Below are positions 3,937-54,481 of a stretch of DNA of 55,165 nucleotides, piece by piece. Source of the stretch: Octopus bimaculoides (taxonomy: Eukaryota); contig NC_068984.1 in NCBI RefSeq assembly GCF_001194135.2, forward strand, positions 121,405,465 to 121,460,629, given 5' to 3'. A program made the translations under genes and the position numbers. Each line of letters opens with the position of its first letter. Position 1 is the stretch's first letter. Under the pieces are notes generated by a model. It saw only the letters and a list, made by a program, of their open reading frames with translations, was not told where the DNA came from and did no database searches.

Positions 3937-4040
3937 NNNNNNNNNNNNNNNNNNNNNNNNNNNNNNNNNNNNNNNNNNNNNNNNNNNNNNNNNNNNNNNN
4001 NNNNNNNNNNNNNNNNNNNNNNNNNNNNNNNNNNNNTATA

Positions 4041-4946: not shown

Positions 4947-5478
4947 NNNNNNNNNNNNNNNNNNNNNNNNNNNNNNNNNNNNNNNNNNNNNNNNNNNNNN
5001 NNNNNNNNNNNNNNNNNNNNNNNNNNNNNNNNNNNNNNNNNNNNNNNNNNNNNNNNNNNNNNNNNNNNNNNNNNNNNNNNNNNNNNNNNNNNNNNNNNNN
5101 NNNNNNNNNNNNNNNNNNNNNNNNNNNNNNNNNNNNNNNNNNNNNNNNNNNNNNNNNNNNNNNNNNNNNNNNNNNNNNNNNNNNNNNNNNNNNNNNNNNN
5201 NNNNNNNNNNNNNNNNNNNNNNNNNNNNNNNNNNNNNNNNNNNNNNNNNNNNNNNNNNNNNNNNNNNNNNNNNNNNNNNNNNNNNNNNNNNNNNNNTCTC
5301 ACAAATATAAGGACACAGGAAATGTGTCAAGGCCGACAGGAAGCGGTCCAGCTTCCCAGGGCTAAATAGCAGCAGTATGATTGCCTTATTGGGACTGTCA
5401 CATTAAGTTGACAGTATACAACTGCTTTATCGTAACACTGCTGCTTAAGTCTCTCTATGAGATTTATAGCTAGATCAT

Positions 5479-10015: not shown

Positions 10016-10898
10016 NNNNNNNNNNNNNNNNNNNNNNNNNNNNNNNNNNNNNNNNNNNNNNNNNNNNNNNNNNNNNNNNNNNNNNNNNNNNNNNNNNNNN
10101 NNNNNNNNNNNNNNNNNNNNNNNNNNNNNNNNNNNNNNNNNNNNNNNNNNNNNNNNNNNNNNNNNNNNNNNNNNNNNNNNNNNNNNNNNNNNNNNNNNNN
10201 NNNNNNNNNNNNNNNNNNNNNNNNNNNNNNNNNNNNNNNNNNNNNNNNNNNNNNNNNNNNNNNNNNNNNNNNNNNNNNNNNNNNNNNNNNNNNNNNNNNN
10301 NNNNNNNNNNNNNNNNNNNNNNNNNNNNNNNNNNNNNNNNNNNNNNNNNNNNNNNNNNNNNNNNNNNNNNNNNNNNNNNNNNNNNNNNNNNNNNNNNNNN
10401 NNNNNNNNNNNNNNNNNNNNNNNNNNNNNNNNNNNNNNNNNNNNNNNNNNNNNNNNNNNNNNNNNNNNNNNNNNNNNNNNNNNNNNNNNNNNNNNNNNNN
10501 NNNNNNNNNNNNNNNNNNNNNNNNNNNNNNNNNNNNNNNNNNNNNNNNNNNNNNNNNNNNNNNNNNNNNNNNNNNNNNNNNNNNNNNNNNNNNNNNNNNN
10601 NNNNNNNNNNNNNNNNNNNNNNNNNNNNNNNNNNNNNNNNNNNNNNNNNNNNNNNNNNNNNNNNNNNNNNNNNNNNNNNNNNNNNNNNNNNNNNNNNNNN
10701 NNNNNNNNNNNNNNNNNNNNNNNNNNNNNNNNNNNNNNNNNNNNNNNNNNNNNNNNNNNNNNNNNNNNNNNNNNNNNNNNNNNNNNNNNNNNNNNNNNNN
10801 NNNNNNNNNNNNNNNNNNNNNNNNNNNNNNNNNNNNNNNNNNNNNNNNNNNNNNNNNNNNNNNNNNNNNNNNNNNNNNNNNNNNNNNNNNNNNNNNNN
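10016..10898. other. Assembly gap. Others at 2962-2971, 3937-4036, 4947-5295, 18590-18883, 21018-21077, 35575-36125
   Basis: Runs of N; long ORFs spanning them are artefacts. Confidence 0.98.
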
Positions 10899-17714: not shown

Positions 17715-18589
17715 TGGTTAAAAAAGAAGTGACAAAAAACTATATTCGGTATATTCAATAAAGGCAACAACGCAACGAAAAGCGTGACGAATATTAATGC
17801 AGTATATGGGGATCGGACAATAAGCGTAAGCCAATGTCAACGATGGTTCCAGAGATTCCGAGCTGGAAACTACAGCCTAGAAGACGAGCCTCGTCCTGGA
17901 AGATCTGTAGAACTCAACGAGGACGTCCTGTAAACCATGGTGGAACAAAATCCCATCGTAGCTGTTGAGGAACTAACAGAGAAGCTTGGATTTGGTTATT
18001 CCACCATTCATCGACACCTGCGTGCCATAGGAAAAGTCACCAAATTGGGTCATTGGGTTCCTCACAAACTTCCCGAGTTTAATTGCGCGCAGGGAGTGAA
18101 TGTGTGCTCTTCTTTGCTGTCACGTCTCACGAATGAAACTTTTTTGGACCGAAAAGCGACTGGTGGCGAGAAATGGGTTCTCTATAAACATGTCAAGCGC
18201 CGAAGACAGTGGTTAGGGAAAGGAGCAACACCGGCACCCCAGGCTAAAGAAGATCTTCACCCATGTAAGATGTTGTTATCTGTTTGGTGGGATATGAAAG
18301 GTTTAGTCCACTCTGAACTTTCAAACCCAAACCAAACGATAACAAAGGAGATCTACAGCAAGCATCTCGAGCGGCTTAAGTCAGCGCTAGAAAAAAACGA
18401 CCATCTTTGGTTTCAAGACGGAAGGTGTTCTTCCATCAGAATAATGCTCGGCCACGTACAGGGATTCCCCACCTTTCATATTCACCGGACATTGCCACAA
18501 CTGATTATCATTTATTCCGCAGGCTTCAAAATCATTTAGACGGAAAAAATATGAATTCTGAAGTCAGAACGGTACTGGAGGAGTATTTT
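17715..18589 (+). mobile_element. Mariner (DD34D) transposase pseudogene, truncated by an assembly gap
   Basis: QRWFQRFRAGNYSLEDEPRPGR, WVPHKL, TGGEKW, LLSVWWD, HQNNARP, YSPDIATTDYHLFR; contains stops and frameshifts. Confidence 0.9.
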
Positions 18590-19239
18590 NNNNNNNNNNN
18601 NNNNNNNNNNNNNNNNNNNNNNNNNNNNNNNNNNNNNNNNNNNNNNNNNNNNNNNNNNNNNNNNNNNNNNNNNNNNNNNNNNNNNNNNNNNNNNNNNNNN
18701 NNNNNNNNNNNNNNNNNNNNNNNNNNNNNNNNNNNNNNNNNNNNNNNNNNNNNNNNNNNNNNNNNNNNNNNNNNNNNNNNNNNNNNNNNNNNNNNNNNNN
18801 NNNNNNNNNNNNNNNNNNNNNNNNNNNNNNNNNNNNNNNNNNNNNNNNNNNNNNNNNNNNNNNNNNNNNNNNNNNNNNNNNNNNGAAGAAGAAGAAGAAG
18901 AAGAAGAAGAAGAAGAAGAAGAAGAAGAAGAAGAAGAAGAAGAAGAAGAAGAAGAAGAAGGAGGAGGAGGAGGGGGAGGAGGAGGAGGAGCGGTAGTAGT
19001 AAAAGAAGGAGAAGAAGAAAAAGAAAAAGACGGGAGTGGTATGACATATAGTAGACTGTTCATGGAATCTTCTTTAATGGTCCAGTGACCTAAAAGTTAC
19101 CTGTTGTGGTTGTAGCAGTAGTGGTAGGAACTGTTCTAAATAAATTCATGAGTAGCGACTGTTCTTGATATATCGTTTTTAATATTTGCGTGAGTATTAT
19201 TCTAAGATCCTTGTAGCAGTGTCATCTGTGGTGGAAGCA

Positions 19240-20128: not shown

Positions 20129-21330
20129 CAGACATAACAGAAGTAAATAGACACTCCATAAAACATCGTTTTATGTTAATTTTAACTTGAAATGGTTTAT
20201 ATTTTTTGTTAATTGACATTTCTATGTTTCGGGTTCTGTATGTGACTGTTTAATCATGCCACGTATAAAAGAAGCCTTGGAACTGTCTGACTTTCAAAGA
20301 GGGCATATTGTGGGTCAATCTGCAGGTGGACATGGGCATAAAATCGCATAAAACCATGGGATAACGCTTTCTACACTTTATTGAGTGATTATGCAATTCA
20401 CCAGAGAGGGTAAGGAGGAGCCCACAACACCTCACCCATGTTGGCCAGGGCCCTCTGACAGGATCCTTCAGTTTGTTAAGAGGAGTGTTGCTAGGCCTCT
20501 GACATAGCAGAGTAAGTTTATGTCAATACCAGAACAGCTATCAAGTATCTCCACAAACTTGGCTACTATGGCAGAGCAACAAGAAGGAAGCCACATCTCT
20601 GACCAGCCAATATCAAAAGGAGAAAAGATTGGACCAGTGAGATGATGGAGAAGTCACTAGCATTTTATGACACTGTCATATTCTATGATGAGTCCAGATT
20701 TGCTGTATTTTCTGACAGTGGTCGAGTATGGGTCAGGAGAATCTGTGATCAAGAATTTGACGTAAAAATATTGCAGCCGACAATGAAACACAGTGGCTAT
20801 TCTGTGATGGTCTGGGAAGCAATTTAGAGCAATGGTCAATCAGAGCTGGTGGAGTGCGAGGGAAACATAAATTCAGAAATATATGTGTGCATATTACAGA
20901 AAGGACTCCTTCCAATCTTCGCCAGTAGAGAAATGAGTAAAGAAGATTCTTTATTTATGAAAGATGGGGCTCCTTGTCATACGACTAAAAAGACTCAAGA
21001 TTGGTTGGAAGAGATTGNNNNNNNNNNNNNNNNNNNNNNNNNNNNNNNNNNNNNNNNNNNNNNNNNNNNNNNNNNNNGCCAAGCCAGTCACCAGATATGA
21101 ACCCTATTGAAAACCTCTTAGCCATAATGGACAAGATACTGTGTAAAAATAACAAGAAAGTATCCCCACAGCCAGATCTTTTGAGATTACTGCATAAAAC
21201 TTGGCAAGAAATTCCTCAAGAGAATATTCGTCATCTGATCAGTAGCATGCTTAATAGGGTTCTTGCATTGAAAAATGCAAAGGGCACTGACAGCTCATTT
21301 TAACAGATATATTTACCAAAATTACAAAAA
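20129..21330 (+). mobile_element. Tc1-like (DD34E) transposase pseudogene
   Basis: ATG at 20256; VIFYDESRF, VMVWEAI, FMKDGAPCH, PSQSPDMNPIENL. Possible left TIR TA|cagacataacag at 20129. Confidence 0.88.
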
Positions 21331-21784: not shown

Positions 21785-23063
21785 CAAGGGTGGGCTGAAA
21801 AGTTCATAGGCTGACTATAAAGCAGTGATGCGCGAGCTGTGAAATCTTACATACATTCATTTCAACTCTACTTATTAATAACTGCGTTGTTTCTTTCCAG
21901 ATGATCTGACATCTGGCTGTTCAAAGAAGACTTCAAAAGTAACTTGTAGCGACTTTACTTTCAAATGGGCAAAATTTGGCACGTAGTATTATTAAGTACC
22001 AGCAGAAAAATGGTTTAGCCCCCTACGACGTTCATGCTAACATGGTTGCTGAGTTAGGGGATGACGCTCCAGTTTTATCAACAGTGCAAAAGTGGGTAGC
22101 TGAATTTAAGACGAAGAGGGAAGGTCTTGAACATGATCCCTGCTACTGTCACCACTGAGAAAAACATTGATCGTGTTCACCACATGGTGATGAATGACAG
22201 ACGACTGACAGTAAATCACAATGCTATTAGCATAACGTGAGAGAGTTGAGAATATTCTGCACAATGAACTCGTCATGACCAAAGTTTCTGCTCCGTAGGT
22301 GCCACCTCTTCTGACACCTAATCAAAAGCGCACCAGGCTGATCACATTACAGGAAAATCTGACATTGTCTGGTGCAGATCCAGCTGGTTTCCTTAAACGA
22401 TTCCTAACCCATGATGAGTGTTGGCTTGATCCTTTTGAGCCACAGAAAAGAGATGATCGATGAGGTGGAAGCTTCCCTTCTAACCAGCTCCATAGAAGGC
22501 CAAGGTTGTTTCATCTGCAGGGAAGGTGATGGCCTCAGCTTTTGAGGATCAAAAAGCAATGTTTATTTGACTATCTTCAAAAGTTCAAAAGGGCTACACC
22601 ATCAATGGCAAGTACTATGCCAAATTGCTGAGGCAGTTACGAAAGGCTATCAAGACCAAACGCCCAGGAAAACTGACGAAATGGGTCTTGTTTCATCTGG
22701 AGAAGGTTCCCACACACAAGTTCTTGGTTTCAATGGCTGCTGTGCGTGAATATGGCTTTGAACTGGTTGATCATCGTACTTATTCTCCTTATTTGGCCCC
22801 ATCTGACTGTCATCTGTTCCCCAACATTAAAAAAAAAACCCTTTCGCTAGGAACCAGTATCGCAGTGATGATGACATCGTATCTACTGTTGATGACTTTT
22901 CTGAGTAACAGGATGAAAGCTTCTTCATCAATGGGATTCAAGCACTGCAACACCAATGGAAAAGTGTAAACCGCAAGCAGGACTATGTTGAAAAATAAAC
23001 CTCATTTGGTCAAATTCCATGAGAGTATTTTGGTCAGCCTATGAACTTTTCAGCCGATCTTCG
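21785..23063 (+). mobile_element. Full-length (1279 bp) decayed mariner element
   Basis: TIRs (ggctgaaaagttcataggctgac at both ends) and TA flanks at 21783-84 and 23064-65. Transposase remnants STVQKWVAEFK, THDE, YSPYLAPSDCHLFP. Confidence 0.92.
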
Positions 23064-35220: not shown

Positions 35221-36400
35221 TCAGAACTAGAGGAGAAGTTTCAGGTGTGGAAGCAAGGTCTAGAATTGAAGGGCCTTAGAGTCAACCTAGCTAAAACCAA
35301 AATCTTAATAAGTAGGAAGGTAGATAAAACACAAACCCCTTCAGGTAGATGGCCCTGCTCAGTATGTAGAAAAGGAGTAGGTAGTAACTCTATAAGATGT
35401 ACCCGGTGCAAGCTATGGACACATAAGAGGTGCAGCAACATCAAAGGCAGGTTAACTAGCAAGTTAGTTTTTGTTTGTGGCAGATGTTCAGGTGCAATAA
35501 AGACTGTAAACAAACAGGAAACAACTTCTATCTCATTCCAGGGTGAAAAACTAGAGGTAGTCGATAGCTTCCGCNNNNNNNNNNNNNNNNNNNNNNNNNN
35601 NNNNNNNNNNNNNNNNNNNNNNNNNNNNNNNNNNNNNNNNNNNNNNNNNNNNNNNNNNNNNNNNNNNNNNNNNNNNNNNNNNNNNNNNNNNNNNNNNNNN
35701 NNNNNNNNNNNNNNNNNNNNNNNNNNNNNNNNNNNNNNNNNNNNNNNNNNNNNNNNNNNNNNNNNNNNNNNNNNNNNNNNNNNNNNNNNNNNNNNNNNNN
35801 NNNNNNNNNNNNNNNNNNNNNNNNNNNNNNNNNNNNNNNNNNNNNNNNNNNNNNNNNNNNNNNNNNNNNNNNNNNNNNNNNNNNNNNNNNNNNNNNNNNN
35901 NNNNNNNNNNNNNNNNNNNNNNNNNNNNNNNNNNNNNNNNNNNNNNNNNNNNNNNNNNNNNNNNNNNNNNNNNNNNNNNNNNNNNNNNNNNNNNNNNNNN
36001 NNNNNNNNNNNNNNNNNNNNNNNNNNNNNNNNNNNNNNNNNNNNNNNNNNNNNNNNNNNNNNNNNNNNNNNNNNNNNNNNNNNNNNNNNNNNNNNNNNNN
36101 NNNNNNNNNNNNNNNNNNNNNNNNNGCAAGCCAAGTAAGATCGTTGCCAGTGCCCCTGGACTGGCCTGTGCGGGTGGCACATAAAAGACACCATTTCGAG
36201 CGTGGCCGTTTTCGTGCGGGGTGACACGTAAAAGCACCCACTACACTCTCTGAGTGGTTGGCGTTAGGAAGGGCATCCAGCTGTAGAAACTCTGCCAAAT
36301 TAGATTGGAGCCTGGTGTTGCCATCCGGTTTCACCAGTCCTCAGTCAAATCGTCCAACCCATGCTAGCATGGAAAGTGGACGTTAAACGATGATGATGAT
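35221..36400 (+). mobile_element. 5'-truncated RTE-clade LINE with a Cys-rich (PHD-like) insertion in the RT; relatively young
   Basis: GLRVNLAKTKIL...WPCSVCRKGVGSNSIRCTRCKLWTHKRCS...VCGRC...LEVVDSFR. Gap 35575-36125; 3'UTR ends in (GAT)n; CpGs retained. Confidence 0.85.
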
Positions 36401-41715: not shown

Positions 41716-42594
41716 AATGAAATTCATAACATAATTTCTTATTACTGCTCTCAACTTGAGGGATGCTTTGCTATGAACCATATATATATCGAGTTTTAAC
41801 ACCAAGTTCTTAGTATCACAATGCCTCAGCAAAATAATAAAATAATATACAGTATGTATTTCAAATTGAAGAAAACTGCATTAGCTTGTTTAATATATGA
41901 ATTAAAAGAAAATGTTTACTTTAATGTGAACATTATGTGAAAGAAGACCATTGTGTGTGTGTGTGTGTGTTTCCTTGTCTTAACATCACTTGATGGTTGT
42001 AAACAAGTGTCACCATCATACAATTGGTGTTGTTTATTAGCAATCTTCTATGGGAAAAAAGCCACATCTGATCATGGGGGAAAATTGGTTTCCTTGGAAA
42101 CAGGTGAGGTTAATGAGAATTTACAGGTTGTTATATATTGACAGTATTTTACATATATTTACAATTCAAACTAGTTATCCTTTGCTTTCACTATAGCGCT
42201 TAGTTCACTATACCAGCCATTTTCAATGCTGGACATTGATGTTTCAACATTGTCCATCACTCCTGAATGGGATAAGTTGTCACACCTGTCTATGTCTTTT
42301 AACACCCAGTGCTTTGAGAGAGTCATCTCCACCATGTCAAACTGCAGCCTACTGGCAAACAAGCTAAGCTCATACTTTGAGTATAAATGTTCAAAAATAT
42401 TTGCAACACTAGTGCTGATGGGAAAAAGTAGGGTTCTCGTACGCGTGGAATGAGAACCTTACATTTTTCCATCGAGATCTTATATTCTCCAATATTAAAC
42501 TCTTTTCTTTAGTCATTGCATGGTGATTGCTGATAAGCTTTAAGCTTATAAAATATTATATGTATGTATATATATTTTCTATTTTTACAGCATA

Positions 42595-43039
42595 ATGAGC
42601 AGTTACAATGTATGCCAAGATGATGATATTAGTATAATACCAAACGAAGATGATGTTTCTGATGTTGCTGCAGCAAGTCCAAATATCACCTTTACTCTGT
42701 CTGCATCACGACAAAACCTTCCTTCATCCATTGGTATAACCTCTATGTCTGCTCTAAAAGATGCATATGAAGAACTGAAAAAGAAGTATAACGAGCTCAA
42801 TACAAGATATCAAGATTTATTGAAGCTTGTCGATGAACGGGGTATGAAGCAAATGAAAGGTTTGCCATCTGATAATCCTGATGAAATGAAACGCAGAAGT
42901 GAAGTCGATACACTACATAAAGCAGTCAGTAAACTGAAAAAGGAATTAGCAGCTGAGAAAACAAAAAATCAGAAACTCAGATCACAACTGCAAAGCCATA
43001 GTGTGGAAACAACTCCTAATACTTCTCTTACTAGTAAAG
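42595..43039 (+). CDS. Coding exon 1 of a TANK/NAP1(AZI2)/SINTBAD-like TBK1 adaptor (N-terminal DDDISII motif and coiled coils)
   Basis: Acceptor ttttacag| at 42590, ATG at 42595, donor AAG|GTTAGT after 43039 (phase 1). MSSYNVCQDDDISII...SMSALKDAYEELKKKY resembles the recalled NAP1 (EDDICIL...SHFALVTAYEDIKKRL) and SINTBAD (EDDISIL) N-termini. Confidence 0.85.
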
Positions 43040-43209
43040 GTTAGTAGATATTACGTTTTTCACCTCTACATTGGACGGTCATTTTGCAAGTATTTTTCTA
43101 TCTAAGGGACATCAGATTTGGTTTTACTGACTGCAGAAGAACCACTCAAGACAAAGTAAAGTGGTTGTGTGTGTCTGTACGTATATATATGTGTGTGTGT
43201 GTATGTATG

Positions 43210-43247
<38 letters not shown>

Positions 43248-43279
43248 TCACAATCAAGGTGCAGAAAAGGCGTATTCCG

Positions 43280-43640
43280 AATAAACAAGTTTTATCTGCC
43301 TTCCTACTTATTAAGACTTTGGCTTTTGCTAGATTGACTCTAAGGCCCTTCGATTCTAGACCTTGCTTCCACACCTGAAACTTCTCTAGTTCTGATAGTG
43401 GCTCAGCTATTCGGGCAAGGTCATCAGCATAGAGAAGCTCCCAGGAGCATCTTGTCTTGAATTCCTCTGTTATTGCCTAAAGGACTATGATAAATAAGAG
43501 GGGGCTGAGGACTGATCCTTGGTGGAGCCCTACTCCTACCTGGAATTCTTCACTGTACTCGTTGCCAGCCCTCACTTTACTGACAGCATCCCTGTACGTG
43601 GCTCATACAGCTCTTACTAATCACTCATCTATAGCAGATG
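43280..43640 (-). mobile_element. RTE-clade LINE fragment, same family as 35221, opposite orientation
   Basis: MWKQGLESKGLRVNLAKAKVLISRKADK; upstream ELLYADDL motif. Confidence 0.85.
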
Positions 43641-44055
43641 AGAAGCACTTAGTAGCACTCAGGAGTGGCTGGAGGGGAGTAGTCGATTACATCGACCTCA
43701 ATGCTTGACTGGTTCTTAATTTATTGACCCCGAAAGGATGAAAGGCAAAGTCACCCTCAGCGGAATTTGAACTAAGAACATAGCAGCAGGCAAAATACCA
43801 GCATCCTAACGGTTCTGCCAGCTCACTAAATTAATAATAATAATCCTTTCTACTTAAAGCACAAGGCCTCATATTTGAGGGAAGGGATTAAGTTGATTAC
43901 ACCTACCCTAATGCTTAACTGGTACTTATTTAATTGACCTTAAAAGAATGAAAGGCAAAGTTGACCTCACTGGAATTTGAACTCAGAACAGTGACAGGTG
44001 AAATACCACTAAGAATTTCGCCCAGCATGCTAATGATTCTGCCAGCTTGAGGCCT

Positions 44056-44093
44056 TAATAATAATAATAATGATAATAATAATAATAATAATA

Positions 44094-44147
<54 letters not shown>
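44056..44147. repeat. Inverted microsatellite (TAA)n-(TTA)n
   Basis: ~13 TAA units abut ~18 TTA units, forming an AT-only palindrome. Confidence 0.85.
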
Positions 44148-44149
<2 letters not shown>

Positions 44150-44238
44150 AAAAAAAAGAGAGACATTAATATAAACATTTCTGGCTTGTTTTTCTGTTTG
44201 TATTTGTTTTTTCTTTTTCTTTTTCTTTCTCTTTACAG

Positions 44239-44331
44239 AAATTGGCAGCATGGAAAGTCTCGACAAGTTGATGGAAAACATTCAGTTTTTAGAGAAGATA
44301 GTTGAAATTCATCAAATGGAAGTTAGGAAAA
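44239..44331 (+). CDS. Coding exon 2 (93 nt) of the adaptor gene; TBK1-binding-domain-like helix
   Basis: Long polypyrimidine tract plus ttacag| acceptor; donor A|GTATGT; phase 1-1. Reads (E)IGSMESLDKLMENIQFLEKIVEIHQMEVRK in frame with both neighbouring exons. Confidence 0.8.
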
Positions 44332-44489
44332 GTATGTACTTACTTTCTTTCAATTAATTAAGATCTTCATAAAATTATAGGTGTGAGCAAAAGCAGCAGG
44401 TAGAATTTTGACAGGATTTATTTACCAAGAATGTGGCACAAAGGAATCCAAAGACTGTCTTCAATGAAAGATGATAATTCTTTTATTAA

Positions 44490-44775
44490 TCTTGTTCCTT
44501 AAATGTCAGCTTAAGTGTCCATGCAGCATCACATAAAAGCATCTGTGTGGCGCCTTGTAAAACCACCTGTATGGTGTTACATAAAAGTGCCCATGCAGTG
44601 CCATGGAAAAGCATCCAGCACACTCTGTAAAGTGGTTGGTGTTAGGAAGGACATCCAGCTGAAGAAACCATGCCAAATCAGACTGGAGTCTGGTGCAGCC
44701 CCCTGGCTCGCCAATTCTGGTCACACCATCCAACCCATGCTAGCATAGACAATGGATGTTAAATGATGATGATGA
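44490..44775 (+). mobile_element. RTE-family 3' tail. Similar tails at ~28590-28810(-), 30960-31125(+), 37830-37940(-), 48690-48820(+)
   Basis: Shared ggttggtgttaggaaggacatccagc...ccaacccatgctagcatgg...gttaaatgatgatgatg. Confidence 0.7.
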
Positions 44776-45908
44776 CTCCAGATCTTCTTGGGCTAACTGT
44801 CACTATCATGCTCATGATAAAAATATTTAATAGCTGTAGGAGTTTTCATAGTATATTAGCTGGAAAATAGCCATACTTTATTTTCATGAGGAAGCTAGCA
44901 GAGCTACATATTAAATATAATTACTAGAGCTTGAAAAAAATAGTGGAAAACTATGTCAAAAAGAGCTTAAGTAAAATATATGAGGTGATATTTTGCAGTA
45001 AGACAAGGAAATAGGAAAAAATTTAGAAACCTCTCATGGAAAATGAGAGAATACCAGATCAGTGTTATATAAGCAATATGCAAAATGTGTAATGGAAAAC
45101 TGTCAGTAAGAAATGTCAAAAGCAAAACACCAAGAACTGCCCTTGTGGTTTTCTTGGGATAGTTTATAAGTTTTGCTGTAATGGAACCTTCAGGAGCTTA
45201 GTACATAAAGTACATTACATATTTAAGATGCTTAGTTTTTATTGCCATTAGAGAATTTTTATCTCTATGCAAATAGTCATGTATTAGATATTCATACCAG
45301 GGTTGTGGTGCTGTCAAGATATGTTGCAACTACTTTGTTACCAAATCTGTTCATAAACAACTGAAGACTGGTGTTTCACAACAGCGAAAAATTTAATCAG
45401 GAGAAACAGTTGAAATGAAGTATACCATCTTTTACATGGGTTAGGCCTGCACATGAGATAATATTGTTGTTCAAACGTATTCAATTCATGACACATTGTC
45501 ACTATTCTTCCTAGTACTTGAATTCATGTATTAATAACTCTATTGTAGTCATAATTTCTTCTTATTTTCCTTAAATGGTTTAGTCAGGATAAAGGGCACA
45601 GTGCCCATGACCTTCACAGGCCATCTATCATCAATTGTCTGAGGTTTTTTGTTTTTGTACATCATCTTCTTCATACAGTACCTTTTCTCATCTACCAGTG
45701 CCTTTTCTACATTGTCATTTTCTTCAATTCATATTGCTTAACTTCTCCTGAATATCTCAGGAAAAACGTTTAGCCTAGTTTTTTTTCTAATTGCTTCATG
45801 TTATCTGTGAGAATTTGTTGTCTCTATATTTTACTTTTTTACTACATTTCTTTATCAATATTTCTAGGATGTAAATTAATTGTGATTTTTACTTTACTAA
45901 TCTTTCAG

Positions 45909-46528
45909 TCCGTCTGCATAGAAATCCTTCCAATGTGATTGCAACATTATCCACCTCATCACATCCAAGAAAACAACTAGAACATAATGAACTTGATATC
46001 TTAAACCCAAGTGAGCATTTTAAAACTTGTTATCCTTGTAATGTGGAGCCTTCAGCTGAAATAGTTCAGGATGAGGATGATGATGACGATGATAATGATC
46101 CTAGCTGGCAGGATTTCAAGAGAGACCCATTTCAAACTCTACATAATCCTCAAAAAGTGATTGACTTGCATCAGAAGCCAAAAATTGATAAACTTACAGA
46201 TTTAAACAAAACTTTTCTGTATGAATCTACAACTCTTTCTCCTCAAAATTCTTCTGTGGCAGAGGCAGCATATAACCTTCCTTTTCAAAACCCTACAAAG
46301 AGGACCGAAGATGAGAATATTATTTGTCCTTATTGTTCAAGAAGCTTTCTTTATTTAGAAATGGGTAAATTCCAAGAGCATATTGCTAACTGTTCCTCCC
46401 AAGGTGAAACAAGAGACTCACACCGTAAATGCCCTGTATGTGACAAAAACTTTCAACATGTATCTCAAAAGGATTTTGAAGTGCATGTTAACATGCATTT
46501 TGACCAAATGGATGGGCTGGATATCTGA
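45909..46528 (+). CDS. Terminal coding exon of the adaptor gene; acidic tract and two C-terminal zinc fingers (CCHC then CCHH, UBZ-like)
   Basis: Acceptor tactaatctttcag| at 45908, in frame with ORF 45935-46528. Contains CPYC..HIANC and CPVCDKNF...FEVHVNMHFDQ. Spliced CDS is 445+93+620=1158 nt, i.e. 385 aa plus stop. Confidence 0.88.
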
Positions 46529-46699
46529 GATACTGTTTAATATTTAAGATATTTGGTTGATTTTTTTATTTGCTATTATTTATTTATATTTTGTATTAAG
46601 TTATCTTCAAACATGTACAGCAATATATGCTGCTATAATTTATTCTCATTTATATTATAGAAATTATTAAATTGAGTACAAAATTATATTGTATATTAT

Positions 46700-46776
46700 A
46701 ATAAACATTTTGACTCTATTTAGAATCAATTTCATGCATCTTTTGTTGTAATTTGTTTTGTTTACTCTTTAATAAA
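46700..46776 (+). promoter_or_regulatory. Candidate polyadenylation signals of the adaptor gene
   Basis: AATAAA at 46700-46705 and 46771-46776, in an AT-rich tract 170-250 nt after the stop codon. Confidence 0.5.
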
Positions 46777-49285: not shown

Positions 49286-52200
49286 TCATTTTTGATTGTT
49301 TTTGTTTTTCTTTAGTGGTAAAATAGCGTAATATTTAATTGAATCGTCCTCATTATCAAGACATTTCATTCTTTCAATCTTTCCACGATAGAAGAGTAAT
49401 CTTACGCAAGGAAGAATCTTCTCAACTCGAATGGCTTGCTTAATTGAATCTATTTGCCAGTTAAGTTCGTTTTTTGATTTAATTACTGAATAAGTATCAT
49501 TTAACATTGCCGTCAGAAGATTTATAAAAATAATGATACCTATTAGAAAATATAAGCAATATAATGCTTTGTACATGTGAGTCAGTGAACTACCTTCATT
49601 CAAGGCATCTTGCAAACTAAAATCAAATATTTCTCCCATTCCTAACATTAAATTAAACAACGCAAAGATTGTTAACCAAGGGTTTTCGTCCTTAAGATTA
49701 CCGGAACCATTTAACCAGATATGAAATGAAAGCGAAAAAGCTAATAAAACGCACGTGTACATGCAAAAAAACCTCAAAATGTCCCTTTCTAACATTTCCG
49801 ATAGCACACGCCAAAAGTAATGCAATGGTTTCAAACCTCGTATAAAAGTTATGCCAAGAAGCCAACCATAGCATAAAACCACACCTAAACATATGTAGTA
49901 GTCTGGATTATTTGTACATCGCTGAATAATCCATGCGATAGAAAGTACTGAATAAATGGACATTATTATTGTTAATAGAAATTTTTTTCGTACATATTTT
50001 GTGAATTTTTTCAATTTATATTGACAAGAATTTTTATCAATGTCTGCACCTAAGTATAGTTTATTGTGTTGATGATGATTTTCATCATCCTCTTCAGGAT
50101 CCTCGTCACGTCCTTTATATCCTAAATAATTGCAGGTAGAACGGAACAAAGATATCAGACAGAAAATTAGGATTACAACTGGTTCACATAAGCTACAAAT
50201 AACTATTAGATTTAAGTTAATGTTCTTCACTTCATCTACTTTATATTTCACCAGCTGATTGGCATTGACAGTCAACAAGAGCATATGTGAAAAATGCACC
50301 AACATTGCCGCGGCACACAGAACCTGATTCATTTCTTTGTATACTACTGCGATATGTTTTAATGGTAAGATAGTGAAAAGTTCCCCAAGCGACGGCTTAG
50401 TTTCCATACTAAGAAATATTTCAAAGGCGCTGCTAGAAGGCATACTTGTATCAGAGTCTTTTTTAATGTTTTTGAAACGTATATCATTGTTTAACAGGAT
50501 TTGTGTCACATCAAAATACTTACAATCGTCTATATCAAACTGCGTTACATATTTTAGTGTCATCAGTTTATTTATAATGTCTTTAGCACATTTTATGAAA
50601 GCCAAACTAAACACACTTAACTGTTTTTTGTTCTTCACTTCAAAAATTAATTTTCGGAAGTCTTTGGAAGAAAATTTCAAGTTATTTTTAGAAGTAAAAT
50701 GATCATGTAGTATGTCGAAAAATTCGAGACATTCACTGTTTCTGATGCAAATTTTAACTAAATCATGGAGGACAGTATTTTCTTTCTCTTTGTACTTAAA
50801 TGTTAAATCAATATTGTGTTGAAGTAACCTTTTAAAGCAACATAAAAATCTTTTTTCAATGACTTTAAAAACTACAGTTTCTCCTTCTTTATTCCTTTTG
50901 TTGAGATCTGCTTTGTTCATTTTAAAGTCATAAATATCGAGCATCTTCTGAAATATTTCTGGTTGCCCGGCACGAATAGCTAAATGATATGGAGTATCAC
51001 CATTCATATCAGATGTATTACAGGTCAAACTACGGCATTCCCAAATAACGTCTGGTGAGCCATATAGTGCGGCCACATGAAGGGCATTTCTTCCTTCCTT
51101 ATCAATGTCATTTAAATTATCCCAAGAATGTCTGTTCATCATGTAATTAACTAAAAGCTTCATGACCTCGGCAGAAGTACTTTTAGATTTTGCAGCAATA
51201 TGCAAAATTGTTTCTCCATTGCAATTTTTAATATTAGCTTTTGCTCCTAATTTAAGAAACGCATTTATTGTTTCAAAATTTCCAGTCGAAGCAGCTAAAT
51301 GAAATGCGGTTTCCTCGTTATTATTTTGTTCATTAAGGAAATTTGGGTCCTTAAAACGCTCCACGATATCATGATGCTTACCTTGAGCGGCAATATGCAG
51401 TATTGTATTACCACCTTCATCTTTTATTTTCATATCTAATTTACGTTTTTCTAAAATCTCTAGTCCACTTAAATCTCCATTTTTTGCAATCTCAAACACA
51501 GGTGAGCGAGTGTTAAATAGCATCTTCATCTCGGTGCTTCCCTGAGTAATTTTTTCCGCAATAATATGTATGAGACCTTGAAAACAAGCTTTATTTCTCT
51601 TAAGTAGTGCAAAGGACCAAATATCCTTGCCTTCCATATTCTTGAGATAGACATTACAACCATATTCTATCAGCATCCGAACAATATGCACCTGATCATT
51701 TTGTATTGCCAAAAACAAAGCCGTATCTCCTTTTGCATTTGTTACATTAAGGTCTGCCTTATTCTGGATTAAAAGTCGTAAGACATCTTCGTGACCTTTA
51801 TTCGCTGCATAATGAATAGGATATAGCTGATAGCAGTCAGGGGTGTTCACATCAATCAGAGATGAGGCAATTATCGCTTCAACGATTTTACTGTAGCCGA
51901 AAGCTGATGCAAGATTAAGAGATGATATTAAATCTGATTGATGTTCATTTGTGAAATATTTTAAAAGAATGTTGACGCATTCGATGTGTCCATAACGTAC
52001 TGCCCAACGAAGTGCAGTACATCCATTAATGTTTTTTAAAAATGGGCAAGCACCCATACTTATAAGCTCTTCAATTAGTGACTTCTGATCACCCCGTGTC
52101 GCCCACATTAATGCGGTTTCTTCCATCAGAGTTTTACTATCTACGGTAATTCCCTGCGATTTATAGAAATTTGTTAATTCACTTAGGCCTAAATAAGCAG

Positions 52201-52639
52201 CTAAATGGTAACATGTTGTTGTTCGGAATAATTTCCCCGGAATATTCATAAGAACTTCTTGTAGAATAATTTCCGGACGATTTTCGTTTGGGAATTTGTC
52301 TAAGAAACATTTTGCCATTTCTTTATCGTTTGATTCAGTTATATATTGTAATAAACTTTTCTCAATAATTCCTTCATTTCTAACTAGATCATATTTCTTA
52401 AGCAAGATATATTCATCTAAATATTCAATTAGACACTTGACTGTTTCGATTTGGTTATCTTCCATAGCATATTGCAAGGCACGTTGTTTCAGAGAATCTG
52501 ATTTATTTTCCAGGTATTCTTTAAGAAGTTCTACTGAGTCATCTTTTACTTTACTTCGCAATTCATCAGGAGACGTAGCTGATTGTTCTGACCAGTCAAT
52601 GTCTTTGAATTGTGCAAAGTCATAATCTTCTAGGAGTCT
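49286..52639 (-). CDS. Ankyrin-repeat TRP cation channel with TRPV-type transmembrane/pore domain and ~16-18 ankyrin repeats; single large exon, 5' exon(s) not located
   Basis: 1119-aa open frame with many GxTALH-type ankyrin repeats. S4/linker GWLLGITFIRG...MLERDILRFF, pore MLGMGE, S6 INLLTAMLNDTY, TRP helix WQIDSIKQAIRVEK. The ORF's TTG-CAG start is really the acceptor tttttgcag|AGA. Confidence 0.92.
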   Translation of the reverse strand, partial: RLLEDYDFAQFKDIDWSEQSATSPDELRSKVKDDSVELLKEYLENKSDSLKQRALQYAMEDNQIETVKCLIEYLDEYILLKKYDLVRNEGIIEKSLLQYITESNDKEMAKCFLDKFPNENRPEIILQEVLMNIPGKLFRTTTCYHLAAYLGLSELTNFYKSQGITVDSKTLMEETALMWATRGDQKSLIEELISMGACPFLKNINGCTALRWAVRYGHIECVNILLKYFTNEHQSDLISSLNLASAFGYSKIVEAIIASSLIDVNTPDCYQLYPIHYAANKGHEDVLRLLIQNKADLNVTNAKGDTALFLAIQNDQVHIVRMLIEYGCNVYLKNMEGKDIWSFALLKRNKACFQGLIHIIAEKITQGSTEMKMLFNTRSPVFEIAKNGDLSGLEILEKRKLDMKIKDEGGNTILHIAAQGKHHDIVERFKDPNFLNEQNNNEETAFHLAASTGNFETINAFLKLGAKANIKNCNGETILHIAAKSKSTSAEVMKLLVNYMMNRHSWDNLNDIDKEGRNALHVAALYGSPDVIWECRSLTCNTSDMNGDTPYHLAIRAGQPEIFQKMLDIYDFKMNKADLNKRNKEGETVVFKVIEKRFLCCFKRLLQHNIDLTFKYKEKENTVLHDLVKICIRNSECLEFFDILHDHFTSKNNLKFSSKDFRKLIFEVKNKKQLSVFSLAFIKCAKDIINKLMTLKYVTQFDIDDCKYFDVTQILLNNDIRFKNIKKDSDTSMPSSSAFEIFLSMETKPSLGELFTILPLKHIAVVYKEMNQVLCAAAMLVHFSHMLLLTVNANQLVKYKVDEVKNINLNLIVICSLCEPVVILIFCLISLFRSTCNYLGYKGRDEDPEEDDENHHQHNKLYLGADIDKNSCQYKLKKFTKYVRKKFLLTIIMSIYSVLSIAWIIQRCTNNPDYYICLGVVLCYGWLLGITFIRGLKPLHYFWRVLSEMLERDILRFFCMYTCVLLAFSLSFHIWLNGSGNLKDENPWLTIFALFNLMLGMGEIFDFSLQDALNEGSSLTHMYKALYCLYFLIGIIIFINLLTAMLNDTYSVIKSKNELNWQIDSIKQAIRVEKILPCVRLLFYRGKIERMKCLDNEDDSIKYYAILPLKKNKNNQK

Positions 52640-54481
52640 CTGCAAAAAGTTTTATTTTAAAATTAACAAACAATATAAACAGTTGATGTCTGTATATAAT
52701 TATTAATTGTACTACAATGTTTAAGATAAGAATAAAATTTTGCACAATAAAACACAAATTATTTAACATTTAACTTTCCCAACTGGCATTTAAATTGAAA
52801 AATAAAATCTATAATAATAAAAGTGTAATTCTGTCTGTCCGTCTGGGACCCCTGTAGTTCAGTCTACATTTGCTCTGCAAAGACATATTTTTTTAAATCA
52901 GGATGATCCCGGAATTGAAACTCGGCCCTTCATTTGGTTCTTAAACATCTAGCATTGGGATCTGATTTAAAAGCATTTTGGTTGCTATTACTAGCAGGTA
53001 AAGCTTGGATGATCCACGCCAACTTCGTTGGCATTTGTCAAATGACGTCAGAGATCAAGGGGAAAATAAATGACACTTGCTTCGTTAATTTTACGTCGTA
53101 ATAAGAACTGGGATAAACTGACTAACAGTTGGAATTCATCTTGGGACTGGGAGAATAGAATGATTACATTACTGAATTAATTCTCATCTATCCATAACCT
53201 CTGATCAAACGCCACCATATAGTCATTATAGACGTATCATAGTGAATGTCATTTAGCTCTCTTTAGTTTTGGGCGGCAGGTCCAATTAGTTCTCTGCAAG
53301 AGCCAGCTTAAAAGTCTGCATGGAGTGTGGCTTTTTAGCTAGTTTAAAATAAATTAAAAGTTTCTTTTAGGACGGCTTAGAAAAACAACACTTTCTGGAA
53401 CGTCATAACAGATTGCAGAGAATTGGCAGTAATTCCATATAAACCTAAATCATTTCTAGGATTCTTGGAAAGGATATAACAAAACTGTTTGTAGTTGTCT
53501 TCTACAGATCGAGGAGAATCTGAGCACTAGTTCCTAAAAAGACACCAACTATACTGATTTTTTTTCTATTTGCATGAAATGATTAGCTGTGCATTCTCGT
53601 GTCATTTGGTTTGGTCAAAGCAGTGAGAGTTAGTTAAATATCTTGCTCAGGAAGAGTGATGAAATCTTGATATCCACACGAACCTCCGACTCTCCCACGA
53701 AAAAGGAATTAATACCAAACTTGGCATCCGATATTATTTAAATTTAAGGAACTTTAGGCATTTATTTCGACGCGCTATCATTTACTCACAACTGTTCACT
53801 CACGCCCGTCAATTATAATCCCTTCTATTATAGGCACAAAGTATGAAATTTGGGGTAAATGGGGGCGGAGACTAGTCGATTTCATCGACCCCAGTACTTG
53901 AGTGGTCCTTATTTCATCGACCTCGAAAGGTGGAATTTGAACTCAGAAGGAAAAGACAGACGAAACACCATTAAGCATTTTGTCCAGTACGCTAACAATT
54001 CTCCCAGTTCACTGCCTTAATAATAATAATAATAATAATAATGATGATGATGATGATGATGTGGATAATAATTTCAAAATTTGGTGCAGGGCCCGCAGTT
54101 TTTGAGGGGAGGGAAAAATCGATTACGTTGACACCAGTACGTGACTGATACTTATTTTATCGATCACAAAAGGATGAAAGACAAAATCGACCTCAACGGA
54201 ATTTGAACTCGGAACGTGAAGACGAGCGAAATGCTTTTTAAGCATTTTATCCGGCGTGCTAACGGTTCTGTCCGCTTGCCGTCTCAACTGTGATGATAAG
54301 GATTTCTTCCGACTATTTATTTTGAGTTCGAATTCTGCCACGGTTCACTTTGCTTTCATTATTTTAGGGTCGATGAAATAAAGTACCACTCAAGTACTGG
54401 GGTCAATATAATCGACTAGCTTCCTTCCGCCAAATTTCATACCTTGTGCCTATAATAGAAAGAAGAAAAAAAATAATCTTT

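What the first reader, a model, noticed from the sequence alone, without database searches (positions are those of the whole stretch)
42595..46528. Candidate single ancestral TBK1 adaptor joining a NAP1/SINTBAD N-terminus, a TBD helix and TAX1BP1/NDP52-like zinc fingers
Seen: three exons splice in frame (phases 1/1) to 385 aa, which the ORF track shows only as fragments. Architecture: DDDISII motif, coiled coil (SALKDAYEELKKKY), second coiled coil, TBD-like helix, acidic tract, CCHC finger, CCHH finger ending HVNMHFDQ. Known (recalled sequences): NAP1/SINTBAD begin EDDI(C/S)IL...AYEDIKKR, and TAX1BP1 ends CPMC...FERHVQTHFDQ. Inference: one protein may combine the TBK1-recruiting adaptor role and the ubiquitin-reading autophagy-receptor role that vertebrates split between proteins, giving a compact innate-immune/xenophagy module in a cephalopod.
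Basis: partly seen in the sequence, partly recalled or inferred. Interest (0 to 1): 0.8.

Follow-up and report, generated by a model that had tools for sequence, protein, structure and literature searches.

The report
Octopus SINTBAD/NAP1-like adaptor with ubiquitin fingers
This is a real three-exon octopus gene, listed in public databases only as "uncharacterized", that encodes a relative of the vertebrate TBK1-kinase adaptors SINTBAD and NAP1 ending in two ubiquitin-binding-type zinc fingers; human SINTBAD has essentially this layout already, so it is not a new fusion of functions.

Summary
Exons 42595-43039, 44239-44331 and 45909-46528 (+) splice with GT/AG sites in phase 1/1 to 385 aa. The product is 100% identical to RefSeq XP_014768742.1, "uncharacterized LOC106868125" of Octopus bimaculoides.

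The protein belongs to an unnamed lophotrochozoan family (cephalopods, gastropods, an annelid).
- N-terminus: the DDDISII motif plus first coiled coil is homologous to AZI2/NAP1 (hhalign 97.1%, E 7e-11). The best PDB hit is NAP1 residues 33-75.
- Last finger: it passes Pfam UBZ1 (PF18112).
- First finger (CCHC): at family level it matches TAX1BP1, Pol kappa and NDP52 UBZ fingers.
- TBD-like helix (exon 2): not demonstrably a TBD. There is no Pfam hit and profile-profile P is only 0.01-0.03. The annelid relative does carry a recognisable TBD at that position.

Human SINTBAD/TBKBP1 already combines this N-terminus, a TBD and a C-terminal UBZ1-like finger, and TANK combines a TBD with such a finger. 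So vertebrates do not simply split these roles.

It is best read as the octopus SINTBAD/NAP1-family adaptor with a doubled UBZ. It is a new member of a known kind, and modestly interesting because a published Aplysia immune-gene survey reported not finding these adaptors.

The parts
42595..43039 (+). Coding exon 1 (ATG to donor, 445 nt, residues 1-148 plus 1 nt). An AG acceptor at 42589-42590 just before the ATG suggests an upstream non-coding exon (inferred).
   Evidence: Identical to XP_014768742.1.
44239..44331 (+). Coding exon 2: a symmetric phase 1/1 exon of 93 nt. It encodes EIGSMESLDKLMENIQFLEKIVEIHQMEVRK, the core of the third helix (residues 148-183). This is the candidate TBK1-binding (TBD-like) helix.
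   Evidence: helix 148-183, block-mean pLDDT 75-92 over residues 151-180. TBD homology is weak.
45909..46528 (+). Coding exon 3 (620 nt, residues 180-385 plus the stop codon at 46526-46528).
42619..42639 (+). DDDISII (residues 9-15): an acidic run followed by a di-aliphatic pair. It is the counterpart of the FIP200-interacting motif EDDI(C/S)IL of NAP1/SINTBAD.
   Evidence: Aligned to AZI2 VEDDICFL by hhalign and to TBKBP1 EDDISIL. The function of the vertebrate motif is from PMC6477152.
42742..42837 (+). First coiled-coil helix (residues 50-81, SALKDAYEELKKKYNELNTRYQDLLKLV). It is homologous to NAP1 33-75, the segment that binds the NDP52/TAX1BP1 SKICH domain.
   Evidence: The NAP1 33-75/NDP52 assignment is from PMC11490886.
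42877..43005 (+). Second long helix / coiled coil (residues 95-137).
   Evidence: block-mean pLDDT above 90 for residues 101-130, lower at the ends. Conserved in the family alignment.
45962..45997 (+). HPRKQLEHNELD (residues 198-209): a small conserved motif after the third helix. It aligns with Capitella SIPLQCTDMEMD and, weakly, with the P(V/I)QC(x)ED end of the vertebrate TBD.
   Evidence: This is a positional argument only.
46067..46099 (+). Acidic tract QDEDDDDDDND (residues 233-243), inside a long predicted-disordered linker (184-314).
46325..46393 (+). Zinc finger 1, CCHC (C319, C322, H337, C341), predicted beta-beta-alpha fold. UBZ-like.
   Evidence: The family profile of this finger hits TAX1BP1 UBZ (E 5e-10), Pol kappa UBZ (1.5e-5), NDP52 (4e-4) and FAAP20 UBZ (6e-3). 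Fold. It matches no Pfam family above the cut-off.
46430..46498 (+). Zinc finger 2, CCHH (C354, C357, H372, H376), UBZ1-type, followed by FDQ.
   Evidence: PF18112 at 24.6-30.8 bits against a cut-off of 23.2. TAX1BP1 UBZ2 alignment. hhalign to the TBKBP1 finger at 92.8% and to TANK at 79%. Foldseek.
46666..46776 (+). Candidate polyadenylation signals (ATTAAA at 46666; AATAAA at 46700 and 46771), 140-250 nt after the stop codon.
   Evidence: Sequence motif only; usage was not tested.

Best explanation
The locus is the Octopus bimaculoides gene LOC106868125. It encodes a 385-aa member of an unnamed lophotrochozoan protein family that is homologous to the vertebrate TBK1 adaptors SINTBAD (TBKBP1) and NAP1 (AZI2).

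Shown here: the module order is the same as in human SINTBAD.
- An N-terminal acidic/di-aliphatic motif, DDDISII.
- Directly after it, a coiled coil homologous to NAP1 33-75.
- Further helices.
- A long disordered, partly acidic linker.
- A C-terminal UBZ1-type zinc finger. In this family the finger is doubled: a CCHC finger followed by a CCHH finger.

Inferred mechanism:
- The coiled coils dimerise the protein.
- The DDDISII motif binds the FIP200/ATG11-type claw.
- The first coiled coil may bind a SKICH-domain receptor.
- The third helix (exon 2) docks the C-terminal coiled coil of the octopus TBK1/IKK-epsilon kinase.
- The two UBZ fingers bind ubiquitin.

Together these would bring the kinase, and possibly the autophagy-initiation complex, to ubiquitin-marked cargo or signalling complexes.
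For: Gene model:
-.

Family:
- A full HMMER scan finds full-architecture relatives in a squid-like transcriptome, Capitella, Pomacea, Gigantopelta and Haliotis. All are 'uncharacterized' or 'UBZ1-type domain-containing'.

N-terminus:
- The lophotrochozoan-only profile against the vertebrate AZI2-only profile gives 97.1%, E 7.4e-11.
- Against TBKBP1, the coiled coil gives E 1.1e-4 and the EDDISIL stretch gives E 0.023, both collinear.
- The best PDB hit of the N-block profile is NAP1 33-75 (5z7g_C), E 2.5e-4.

Fingers:
- PF18112 is above its cut-off in octopus and in 8 of 10 family members, best E 4.6e-11.
- The finger-1 profile matches UBZ fingers.
- AlphaFold2 gives two beta-beta-alpha fingers with block-mean pLDDT about 59-83, and Foldseek's top PDB hit is the TAX1BP1 UBZ1+2 tandem (prob 0.97).

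Same architecture in vertebrates:
- Human TBKBP1 has a TBD plus PF18112 at 22.1 bits at residues 584-609, and hhalign of the fingers gives 92.8%, E 3.9e-7.

TBD:
- The annelid member has a TBD hit at the equivalent position (Pfam E 1e-4; own HMM 15.4 bits, P 4.7e-8).
- The octopus/mollusc helix aligns to the TBD in one consistent register with P 0.014-0.025.
- The mollusc-helix HMM's best domain lands on the TBD in 5 of the 6 vertebrate AZI2 sequences tested, which are close orthologues and so not independent.

Functions of the vertebrate modules:
- PMC6477152 for the FIP200 motif (SINTBAD residues 5-15, IL11-12).
- PMC11490886 for NDP52 binding at AZI2 33-75 and TBK1 binding at AZI2 215-255.
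Against: - The octopus protein gives no PF12845 hit, even when the segment is scanned alone at E<=10.
- The short helix block against AZI2 is not significant (E 0.26).
- A reversed-sequence control reaches the same hhalign score as the real block.
- Vertebrate TBD HMMs prefer the N-terminal ALxxAYxELKK motif in mollusc proteins, not the third helix.
- No binding of TBK1, FIP200, a SKICH domain or ubiquitin was or could be tested.
- The finger-1 assignment rests on a family profile, not on a curated model.
- The structure model is poor overall (pTM 0.20, mean pLDDT 57.6), so only local elements can be used.
Confidence: 0.6

Rival explanations
1. It is a SINTBAD/NAP1 homologue that has lost kinase docking in molluscs. 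It would then act as a ubiquitin-binding coiled-coil scaffold that links ubiquitinated cargo to FIP200 and/or SKICH receptors without recruiting TBK1. The third helix would be just another coiled-coil or oligomerisation segment.
For: - No TBD profile hit in any mollusc member.
- The reversed control equals the real hhalign score.
- The N-terminal and finger modules are the only ones with significant homology.
Against: - The third helix is conserved across cephalopods and gastropods at the position where the annelid relative has a recognisable TBD.
- The register of its weak TBD alignment is the same in four independent comparisons.
Confidence: 0.25
2. It is a TAX1BP1/NDP52 (CALCOCO-family) autophagy receptor that has lost or never had the SKICH domain. 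NCBI's name for the Haliotis relative ('tax1-binding protein 1 homolog') implies this reading.
For: - The tandem C-terminal UBZ fingers find TAX1BP1 UBZ1+2 as their best sequence and fold match.
- Long coiled coils are present.
Against: - No SKICH/CALCOCO Pfam hit among those listed for the octopus protein (best 25 families, E<=10) or for five relatives scanned at E<=0.01.
- The N-terminus is homologous to the SKICH ligand (NAP1 33-75), not to SKICH.
- The finger also aligns to TBKBP1 and TANK.
Confidence: 0.05
3. It is the octopus orthologue of TANK rather than of SINTBAD/NAP1.
For: - TANK has a TBD plus a C-terminal C2H2 finger that aligns to octopus finger 2 (E 1.6e-5).
- The annelid relative carries SIPLQCTD, nearly identical to TANK SVPIQCTD.
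Against: - Only the finger aligns to TANK. The N-terminal module matches AZI2/TBKBP1 instead.
- The octopus protein has no PxQx(T/S) or PxQxxD motif.
- TANK did not bind FIP200, whereas SINTBAD/NAP1 did so through the N-terminal motif that octopus conserves (PMC6477152).
Confidence: 0.05

Closest known systems
SINTBAD / TBKBP1 (vertebrate TBK1 adaptor)
   Same: The order of modules is the same: the N-terminal EDDISIL-type motif, an adjacent coiled coil, further coiled coils, a mid-protein helix at the TBD position, a long disordered region, and a UBZ1-like C2H2 finger at the very C-terminus.
   Different: - The octopus protein is shorter (385 against 615 aa).
- It lacks the proline-rich SP repeats.
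- It has an extra CCHC UBZ-like finger in front of the last finger.
- Its TBD is not recognisable by Pfam.
- Its terminal finger fits the UBZ1 model better than SINTBAD's own does (24.6-30.8 against 22.1 bits).
NAP1 / AZI2
   Same: This is the strongest sequence relationship: the DDDISII motif plus the first coiled coil match AZI2 residues about 5-71 (97.1%, E 7.4e-11; PDB 5z7g NAP1 33-75, E 2.5e-4). The overall size is also similar.
   Different: AZI2 has no zinc finger and a clear TBD (72-75 bits). Octopus has two fingers and no detectable TBD.
TANK (I-TRAF)
   Same: A C-terminal C2H2 finger that aligns to octopus finger 2, and an adaptor-type coiled-coil protein.
   Different: TANK lacks the FIP200-binding N-terminal motif, and it carries the PIQCTD TRAF-binding motif inside its TBD. 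Octopus has the former and not the latter.
TAX1BP1 / NDP52 (CALCOCO2) autophagy receptors
   Same: Tandem C-terminal UBZ fingers. Octopus finger 2 keeps CP.C...F......FE.HV..HFDQ of TAX1BP1 UBZ2. The best fold match is the UBZ1+2 tandem 4bmj.
   Different: Octopus has no SKICH domain. The fingers are separated by a 12-residue linker rather than abutting. Finger 1 is CCHC. The N-terminus resembles the partner of SKICH rather than SKICH itself.
Optineurin / NEMO (CCHC zinc finger, TBK1- or IKK-binding coiled-coil adaptors)
   Same: A coiled-coil adaptor with a C-terminal CCHC ubiquitin-binding-type finger. By eye, family finger 1 (MEDFQTHVFEC) resembles the NEMO/optineurin finger; that comparison sequence is recalled from memory.
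   Different: The match is only weak (optineurin finger E 0.26). There is no UBAN domain hit.

Membership tests
NAP1/SINTBAD (AZI2/TBKBP1) TBK1-adaptor family | An N-terminal acidic run followed by a di-aliphatic pair (EDDI[CS]IL) within the first ~15 residues. This is the FIP200-interacting motif. | tested here: met
   DDDISII at residues 9-15. It is conserved in cephalopod and gastropod members and aligned to the AZI2 and TBKBP1 motif. Definition from PMC6477152.
NAP1/SINTBAD (AZI2/TBKBP1) TBK1-adaptor family | A coiled coil homologous to NAP1 33-75 (the NDP52/TAX1BP1 SKICH-binding segment). | tested here: met
   hmmsearch of the lophotrochozoan N-block against PDB: top hit 5z7g_C, E 2.5e-4. 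hhalign against AZI2 E 7.4e-11, against TBKBP1 E 1.1e-4.
NAP1/SINTBAD (AZI2/TBKBP1) TBK1-adaptor family | A TBK1-binding domain (Pfam PF12845 TBD). | tested here: inconclusive
   - No Pfam hit in octopus at E<=10.
- hhalign P 0.014-0.025 in a consistent register, but the reversed control scores the same.
- The annelid member is sub-threshold at 22.5 bits against a cut-off of 27, and P 4.7e-8 with my own HMM.
NAP1/SINTBAD (AZI2/TBKBP1) TBK1-adaptor family | [quoted passage not shown] | not testable with these tools
   No complex prediction or experiment is available here.
UBZ1-type zinc finger (Pfam PF18112 Zn-C2H2_12) | Profile score above the curated cut-off, with four CCHH zinc ligands. | tested here: met
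   Finger 2 (354-376): 24.6 bits in the whole protein and 30.8 bits as a fragment, against a cut-off of 23.2. The ligands are C354, C357, H372 and H376.
UBZ1-type zinc finger (Pfam PF18112 Zn-C2H2_12) | The same, for finger 1 (319-341). | tested here: not met
   No PF18112 hit for finger 1, and it is CCHC. However, the family profile of this finger hits TAX1BP1 UBZ at E 5e-10 and Pol kappa UBZ at 1.5e-5. It is therefore UBZ-like, but not a curated UBZ1 member.
UBZ1-type zinc finger (Pfam PF18112 Zn-C2H2_12) | Ubiquitin binding. | not testable with these tools
   The only evidence is conservation of the FE.HV..HFDQ helix of TAX1BP1 UBZ2 and the fold match to UBZ-ubiquitin complexes 4xkl, 5yt6 and 3wwq.
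TAX1BP1/NDP52 (CALCOCO) autophagy receptors | An N-terminal SKICH domain. | tested here: not met
   No SKICH/CALCOCO family appears among the Pfam hits listed for the octopus protein (best 25 families at E<=10) or for five relatives at E<=0.01. The N-terminus matches NAP1 instead.
TAX1BP1/NDP52 (CALCOCO) autophagy receptors | Tandem C-terminal ubiquitin-binding zinc fingers. | tested here: met
TANK | A TRAF-binding PxQx(T/S) motif within or next to the TBD. | tested here: not met
   There is no PxQx[TS] or PxQxxD in the 385-aa protein. The Capitella relative has SIPLQCTD.
TANK | A C-terminal C2H2 finger homologous to that of TANK. | tested here: met
   hhalign 79%, E 1.6e-5, for octopus 345-380 against TANK 273-310.

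The most novel reading that the evidence does not exclude
The lophotrochozoan SINTBAD/NAP1-like proteins, with a FIP200 motif, a kinase-docking helix and two good UBZ fingers in one chain, act as self-sufficient cargo receptors. They would read ubiquitin directly and bring both TBK1/IKK-epsilon and the ULK/FIP200 complex to the cargo. This would be the ancestral state. Vertebrate NAP1 would then have lost the finger, and SINTBAD kept only a degenerate one, after handing ubiquitin reading to SKICH receptors and optineurin.
Probability: 0.25. Interest if true: 0.6.

Novelty: new member of a known kind. Interest (0 to 1): 0.4.

Why it matters
It gives a name and a testable function to a gene family that public databases list only as 'uncharacterized' or 'UBZ1-type domain-containing'. 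One gastropod copy is even mis-named 'tax1-binding protein 1 homolog' or 'cytospin-A-like'.

A published survey of the Aplysia immune gene set reported that SINTBAD and TANK orthologues 'were not identified'. The 'NAP1' it listed was Nck-associated protein 1, a different protein (PMC9334734). This family is therefore a candidate for the missing TBK1/IKK-epsilon adaptor of molluscs and annelids.

It also shows that the SINTBAD layout (FIP200 motif, coiled coil, C-terminal UBZ finger) is shared by vertebrates and lophotrochozoans, so on the usual view of animal relationships it predates the protostome-deuterostome split. That bears on a statement in the current literature that NAP1/SINTBAD lack the ubiquitin-binding capability of cargo receptors (PMC11564117). 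The terminal finger of SINTBAD deserves a direct ubiquitin-binding test.

Tried and rejected
1. Word-indexed protein searches with the single protein and with the full family alignment found only Octopus and Argonauta. The second search was probably swamped by low-complexity words. The exhaustive HMMER scan was what revealed the family.

2. A mixed block alignment that included recalled human sequences was used only to retrieve database proteins. Its E-values are circular and are not used as evidence. The list was dominated by AZI2 and gave no TBKBP1.

3. The recalled human TBKBP1, TANK and AZI2 sequences were then verified by exact look-up, and only the database copies were used.

4. TBD tests that did not reach significance:
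- Pfam on the whole protein and on the isolated segment.
- phmmer and hmmsearch of the helix against PDB, which appears to hold no TBD chain.
- hhalign of the short block.
- Vertebrate TBD HMMs against mollusc proteins.
- The column-shuffle test gave 3 of 300 shuffles reaching the observed score. I discount it because the reversed alignment scored identically through an 8-column match.

5. P0015, a 2,875-aa repetitive protein, was rejected as a chance coiled-coil hit.

6. A search for the alternative O. vulgaris N-terminal extension (MIRNSRFN) found nothing in the window.

7. Literature searches found no paper describing the SINTBAD finger or an invertebrate SINTBAD/NAP1 homologue. Ryzhakov and Randow 2007 is not held.

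8. The Pfam scan of the LINE-like fragment in intron 1 failed because of stop codons.

Full report
**The observation**

The region 42595-46528 on the + strand holds three coding exons: 42595-43039, 44239-44331 and 45909-46528. Each internal boundary has a polypyrimidine tract and AG before the exon, and GT after it (gttagt, gtatgt). The lengths are 445, 93 and 620 nt, which gives intron phases 1 and 1 and a 1158-nt reading frame of 385 codons.

The spliced product is 100% identical to XP_014768742.1/XP_014768743.1, 'uncharacterized protein LOC106868125' of Octopus bimaculoides. It is 96% identical to the O. vulgaris/O. sinensis protein.

A partial Argonauta model reads straight through both junctions. 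A 423-aa relative occurs as one uninterrupted ORF on the three 1.7-1.9 kb run-assembly contigs shown, of nine contigs (all under 2 kb) that carry it, which is what mRNA looks like. The exon chain is therefore real, and it was already modelled by RefSeq.

**The family**

An exhaustive HMMER scan of 1.84 billion representative proteins gave only 20 hits. Those with the full layout come from these sources:
- a squid-like transcriptome (P0007)
- the annelid Capitella teleta (P0012)
- the gastropods Pomacea, Gigantopelta and Haliotis (P0016/P0025, P0019, P0024/P0034)

Their public names are 'uncharacterized', 'UBZ1-type domain-containing protein', and for Haliotis 'tax1-binding protein 1 homolog' or 'cytospin-A-like'.

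The alignment of ten members (A2) has four conserved blocks separated by variable, often low-complexity sequence:
- DDDI(S/Y)I(L/I) near the N-terminus
- AL..AY.(E/D)LKK(K/R)(Y/F)NE
- a helix of the form EL..L..VI..L...V..Q...L.K
- two zinc fingers: CP.C...F.......FQ.HV..C and CP.C...F.......FE.HV..HF

**The N-terminus**

A profile of the lophotrochozoan N-terminal block alone, searched against all PDB chain sequences, has as its best hit the NAP1/AZI2 fragment 33-75 crystallised with the NDP52 SKICH domain (5z7g_C, E 2.5e-4).

Profile-profile comparison of the lophotrochozoan alignment with an alignment of nine vertebrate AZI2 proteins aligns 70 columns, from DDDISII/EDDICIL to the end of the first helix. 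The probability is 97.1% and E is 7.4e-11. The two profiles share no sequences, so this is not circular.

Against mammalian TBKBP1, the coiled coil gives E 1.1e-4 and the EDDISIL stretch gives a separate collinear hit at E 0.023.

In vertebrates, SINTBAD residues 5-15 and the Ile-Leu pair are required for FIP200 binding (PMC6477152). AZI2 33-75 binds NDP52 (PMC11490886).

**The fingers**

Finger 2 (C354, C357, H372, H376) passes the curated Pfam model for the autophagy-receptor UBZ1 finger, PF18112. It scores 24.6 bits in the whole protein and 30.8 bits as a fragment, against a cut-off of 23.2. Eight of ten family members match, with best E 4.6e-11. The best PDB sequence hits are the TAX1BP1 UBZ chains, with CP.C...F......FE.HV..HFDQ shared with UBZ2.

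Finger 1 (C319, C322, H337, C341) matches no curated model. A profile of this finger from twelve relatives does hit the following:
- TAX1BP1 UBZ1 and UBZ2, E 5e-10
- the DNA polymerase kappa UBZ, E 1.5e-5
- NDP52, E 4e-4
- FAAP20, E 6e-3

AlphaFold2 with the family alignment gives three long helices (50-81, 95-137, 148-183), two beta-beta-alpha fingers (317-343, 353-379; block-mean pLDDT about 59-83), and disorder elsewhere. Foldseek's best PDB match is the TAX1BP1 UBZ1+2 tandem (4bmj, probability 0.97, E 0.04). Single-finger superpositions on NDP52 ZF2-ubiquitin and FAAP20 UBZ-diubiquitin have rmsd 1.3-1.5 Å. The Foldseek E-values are not significant by themselves, but they agree with the sequence result.

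**The TBD-like helix**

This is the weak point.
- The octopus protein gives no PF12845 hit, either whole or as the isolated segment at E<=10.
- A TBD HMM built from database AZI2, TANK and TBKBP1 sequences does not find the third helix in any mollusc. It prefers the N-terminal AL..AY.ELKK motif, which resembles the AYWELKRE start of the TBD.
- Profile-profile comparison of an extended block (helix plus the following HPRKQLEHNELD motif) with the vertebrate TBD gives P 0.014. The expected register appears: KLMENIQFLEKIVEIHQMEVRKI over ELKREMSNLHLVTQVQAELLRKL. Only 3 of 300 column shuffles reach this score.
- However, the reversed alignment reaches the same score through a short match.
- A mollusc-only block against TBD plus Capitella gives P 0.025 in the same register.
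- The mollusc-helix HMM's best domain falls on the TBD in 5 of the 6 vertebrate AZI2 proteins tested, but these are close orthologues and not independent.

What lifts the case above chance is the annelid member. Capitella residues 190-232 (AEMSALRKLAEHQKSAIQQLLLSPSNRDSPMLSIPLQCTDMEM) match Pfam TBD positions 16-55 at E 1e-4 and 22.5 bits, below the cut-off of 27. They match my own HMM at 15.4 bits, P 4.7e-8. This segment sits between the coiled coils and the fingers, overlapping the block that aligns with the mollusc helix.

My reading is that the family ancestrally had a TBD, and that the mollusc helix is probably its diverged descendant (about two chances in three). This is not demonstrated. 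Exon 2 encodes exactly this helix and is symmetric (93 nt, phase 1/1), so skipping it would remove the helix without breaking the frame. That last point is an inference only.

**Comparison with vertebrates**

By exact look-up I confirmed the human TBKBP1, TANK and AZI2 sequences in the database and scanned them against Pfam:
- TBKBP1/SINTBAD has the TBD (288-342, 70 bits) and, at its very C-terminus (584-609), a finger scoring 22.1 bits on PF18112, just under the cut-off. One TBKBP1 cluster member is even titled 'UBZ1-type domain-containing protein' by UniRef.
- TANK has the TBD at 92 bits and no PF18112 hit.
- AZI2 has the TBD at 75 bits and no finger.

The octopus family's last finger aligns to the SINTBAD finger with 92.8% probability, E 3.9e-7. 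It aligns to the TANK finger CEFCQAVFPPSITSRGDFLRHLNSHF with 79%, E 1.6e-5.

So the combination 'NAP1/SINTBAD N-terminus + TBD position + C-terminal UBZ1-type finger' is the SINTBAD layout. It is not a union of roles that vertebrates keep in separate proteins. What is particular to the lophotrochozoan family is a second CCHC UBZ-like finger, a better-preserved terminal finger, and in molluscs a TBD that has drifted out of profile range.

**Likely mechanism** (inferred from the homologous modules; nothing was tested for binding)

A coiled-coil dimer would present four elements:
- an N-terminal FIP200-claw ligand
- a possible SKICH-binding coiled coil
- a kinase-docking helix for TBK1/IKK-epsilon
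- after a flexible acidic linker, two ubiquitin-binding fingers that target the complex to ubiquitin-marked cargo or receptor complexes

The main rival is that kinase docking has been lost and the protein is a ubiquitin/FIP200 scaffold only. Readings as a SKICH-less TAX1BP1 or as a TANK orthologue fit the evidence poorly. There is no SKICH hit and the N-terminus is that of the SKICH ligand. There is no TRAF motif, and there is a FIP200 motif that TANK lacks.

**Novelty**

The gene model is public, so the sequence itself is not new. I found no paper that describes an invertebrate SINTBAD/NAP1 homologue.

The Aplysia immunome survey states that SINTBAD and TANK orthologues were not identified, and the 'NAP1' it reports is Nck-associated protein 1 (IPR019137), a name collision (PMC9334734). 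A recent mechanistic paper describes NAP1/SINTBAD as lacking the ubiquitin-binding capability of cargo receptors (PMC11564117). I found no test of the SINTBAD finger in the papers I could search.

I therefore class the finding as a new, unannotated member of a known kind. It is useful for comparative innate immunity and selective autophagy, but not surprising in kind.

**Limits**

- 'Single ancestral adaptor' was not tested, because I did not survey the octopus proteome for other TBK1 adaptors.
- Orthology (as opposed to homology) to SINTBAD against NAP1 is unresolved. The TBKBP1 alignment available was mammal-only and of low diversity.
- The organism of the squid-like transcript contigs was not identified.

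Noticed in passing
window 49286-52645 (-): A single uninterrupted 1,119-aa ORF on the opposite strand, 2.8 kb downstream. It has many ankyrin repeats (Ank_2, E 4e-64) followed by an Ion_trans domain (25.5 bits, at its cut-off). This is a TRPA-like cation channel gene that appears largely intronless. The public gene call is 1,150 aa.
   Followed up: partly
window 17937-18539 (+) and 22625-22969 (+): Mariner-type transposase remnants. The first ORF hits PF01359 Transposase_1 at E 1.8e-21. The second looks like the C-terminal end of the same kind of transposase, by eye only.
   Followed up: partly
window 43102-43575 (-) in intron 1; also 35245-36138 (+): LINE-like fragments. A reverse-transcriptase-type motif (GLHQGSVLSPLLF) and a shared 3' ORF end (MWKQGLE.KGLRVNLAK.K.LISRK) occur inside intron 1 on the minus strand and again at about 35.2 kb. 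This was seen by eye in the ORF translations. The Pfam scan failed because of stop codons.
   Followed up: partly
window 43681-43780 and 43891-43990; 44049-44147 (intron 1): Two 100-nt direct copies (81% identical, 210 nt apart) of a SINE-like element, followed by an (AAT)n/(ATT)n microsatellite that runs up to the polypyrimidine tract of exon 2.
   Followed up: partly
window 2962-2971, 3937-4036, 4947-5296, 10016-10898, 18590-18884, 21018-21077, 35575-36125: Runs of N (assembly gaps). None falls inside the gene studied.
   Followed up: yes
octopus residues 52-63 (window 42748-42783); AZI2 about 40-52 and about 209-220: TBD HMMs built from vertebrate sequences cross-hit the N-terminal AL..AY.ELKK motif in all mollusc members. 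The start of the first coiled coil (ALVTAYEDIKKR) and the start of the TBD (QHAYWELKRE) resemble each other within vertebrate AZI2 too. This could be an old internal duplication or a shared helix-capping motif.
   Followed up: no
Capitella P0012 residues 220-227: SIPLQCTD in the annelid relative is almost the TANK sequence SVPIQCTD. From memory, this TANK sequence is the TRAF-binding PxQxT motif. The octopus protein has no such motif. TRAF binding may therefore be ancestral and lost in cephalopods.
   Followed up: partly
proteins P0010, P0013, P0018, P0021 (226-309 aa, ENA assemblies): Shorter proteins of unknown organisms end in the same CCHC + CCHH finger pair but lack the NAP1-like N-terminus. 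P0009, P0011 and P0014 are arrays of three or four such fingers. They could be partial models or separate UBZ-tandem families.
   Followed up: no
octopus residues 233-249 (window 46067-46117): The acidic tract is followed by SWQDF, an aromatic motif after an acidic run that recalls LIR/FIR-type motifs. It is not canonical (it ends in F) and is not conserved in the squid-like relative.
   Followed up: no
literature: PMC9334734: In the Aplysia immunome survey the TBK1 adaptor 'NAP1' was identified through IPR019137 and is expanded as 'Nck-associated protein 1'. That is a different protein from NAK-associated protein 1 (AZI2), so the paper's one reported non-canonical IKK adaptor is a name collision.
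   Followed up: yes
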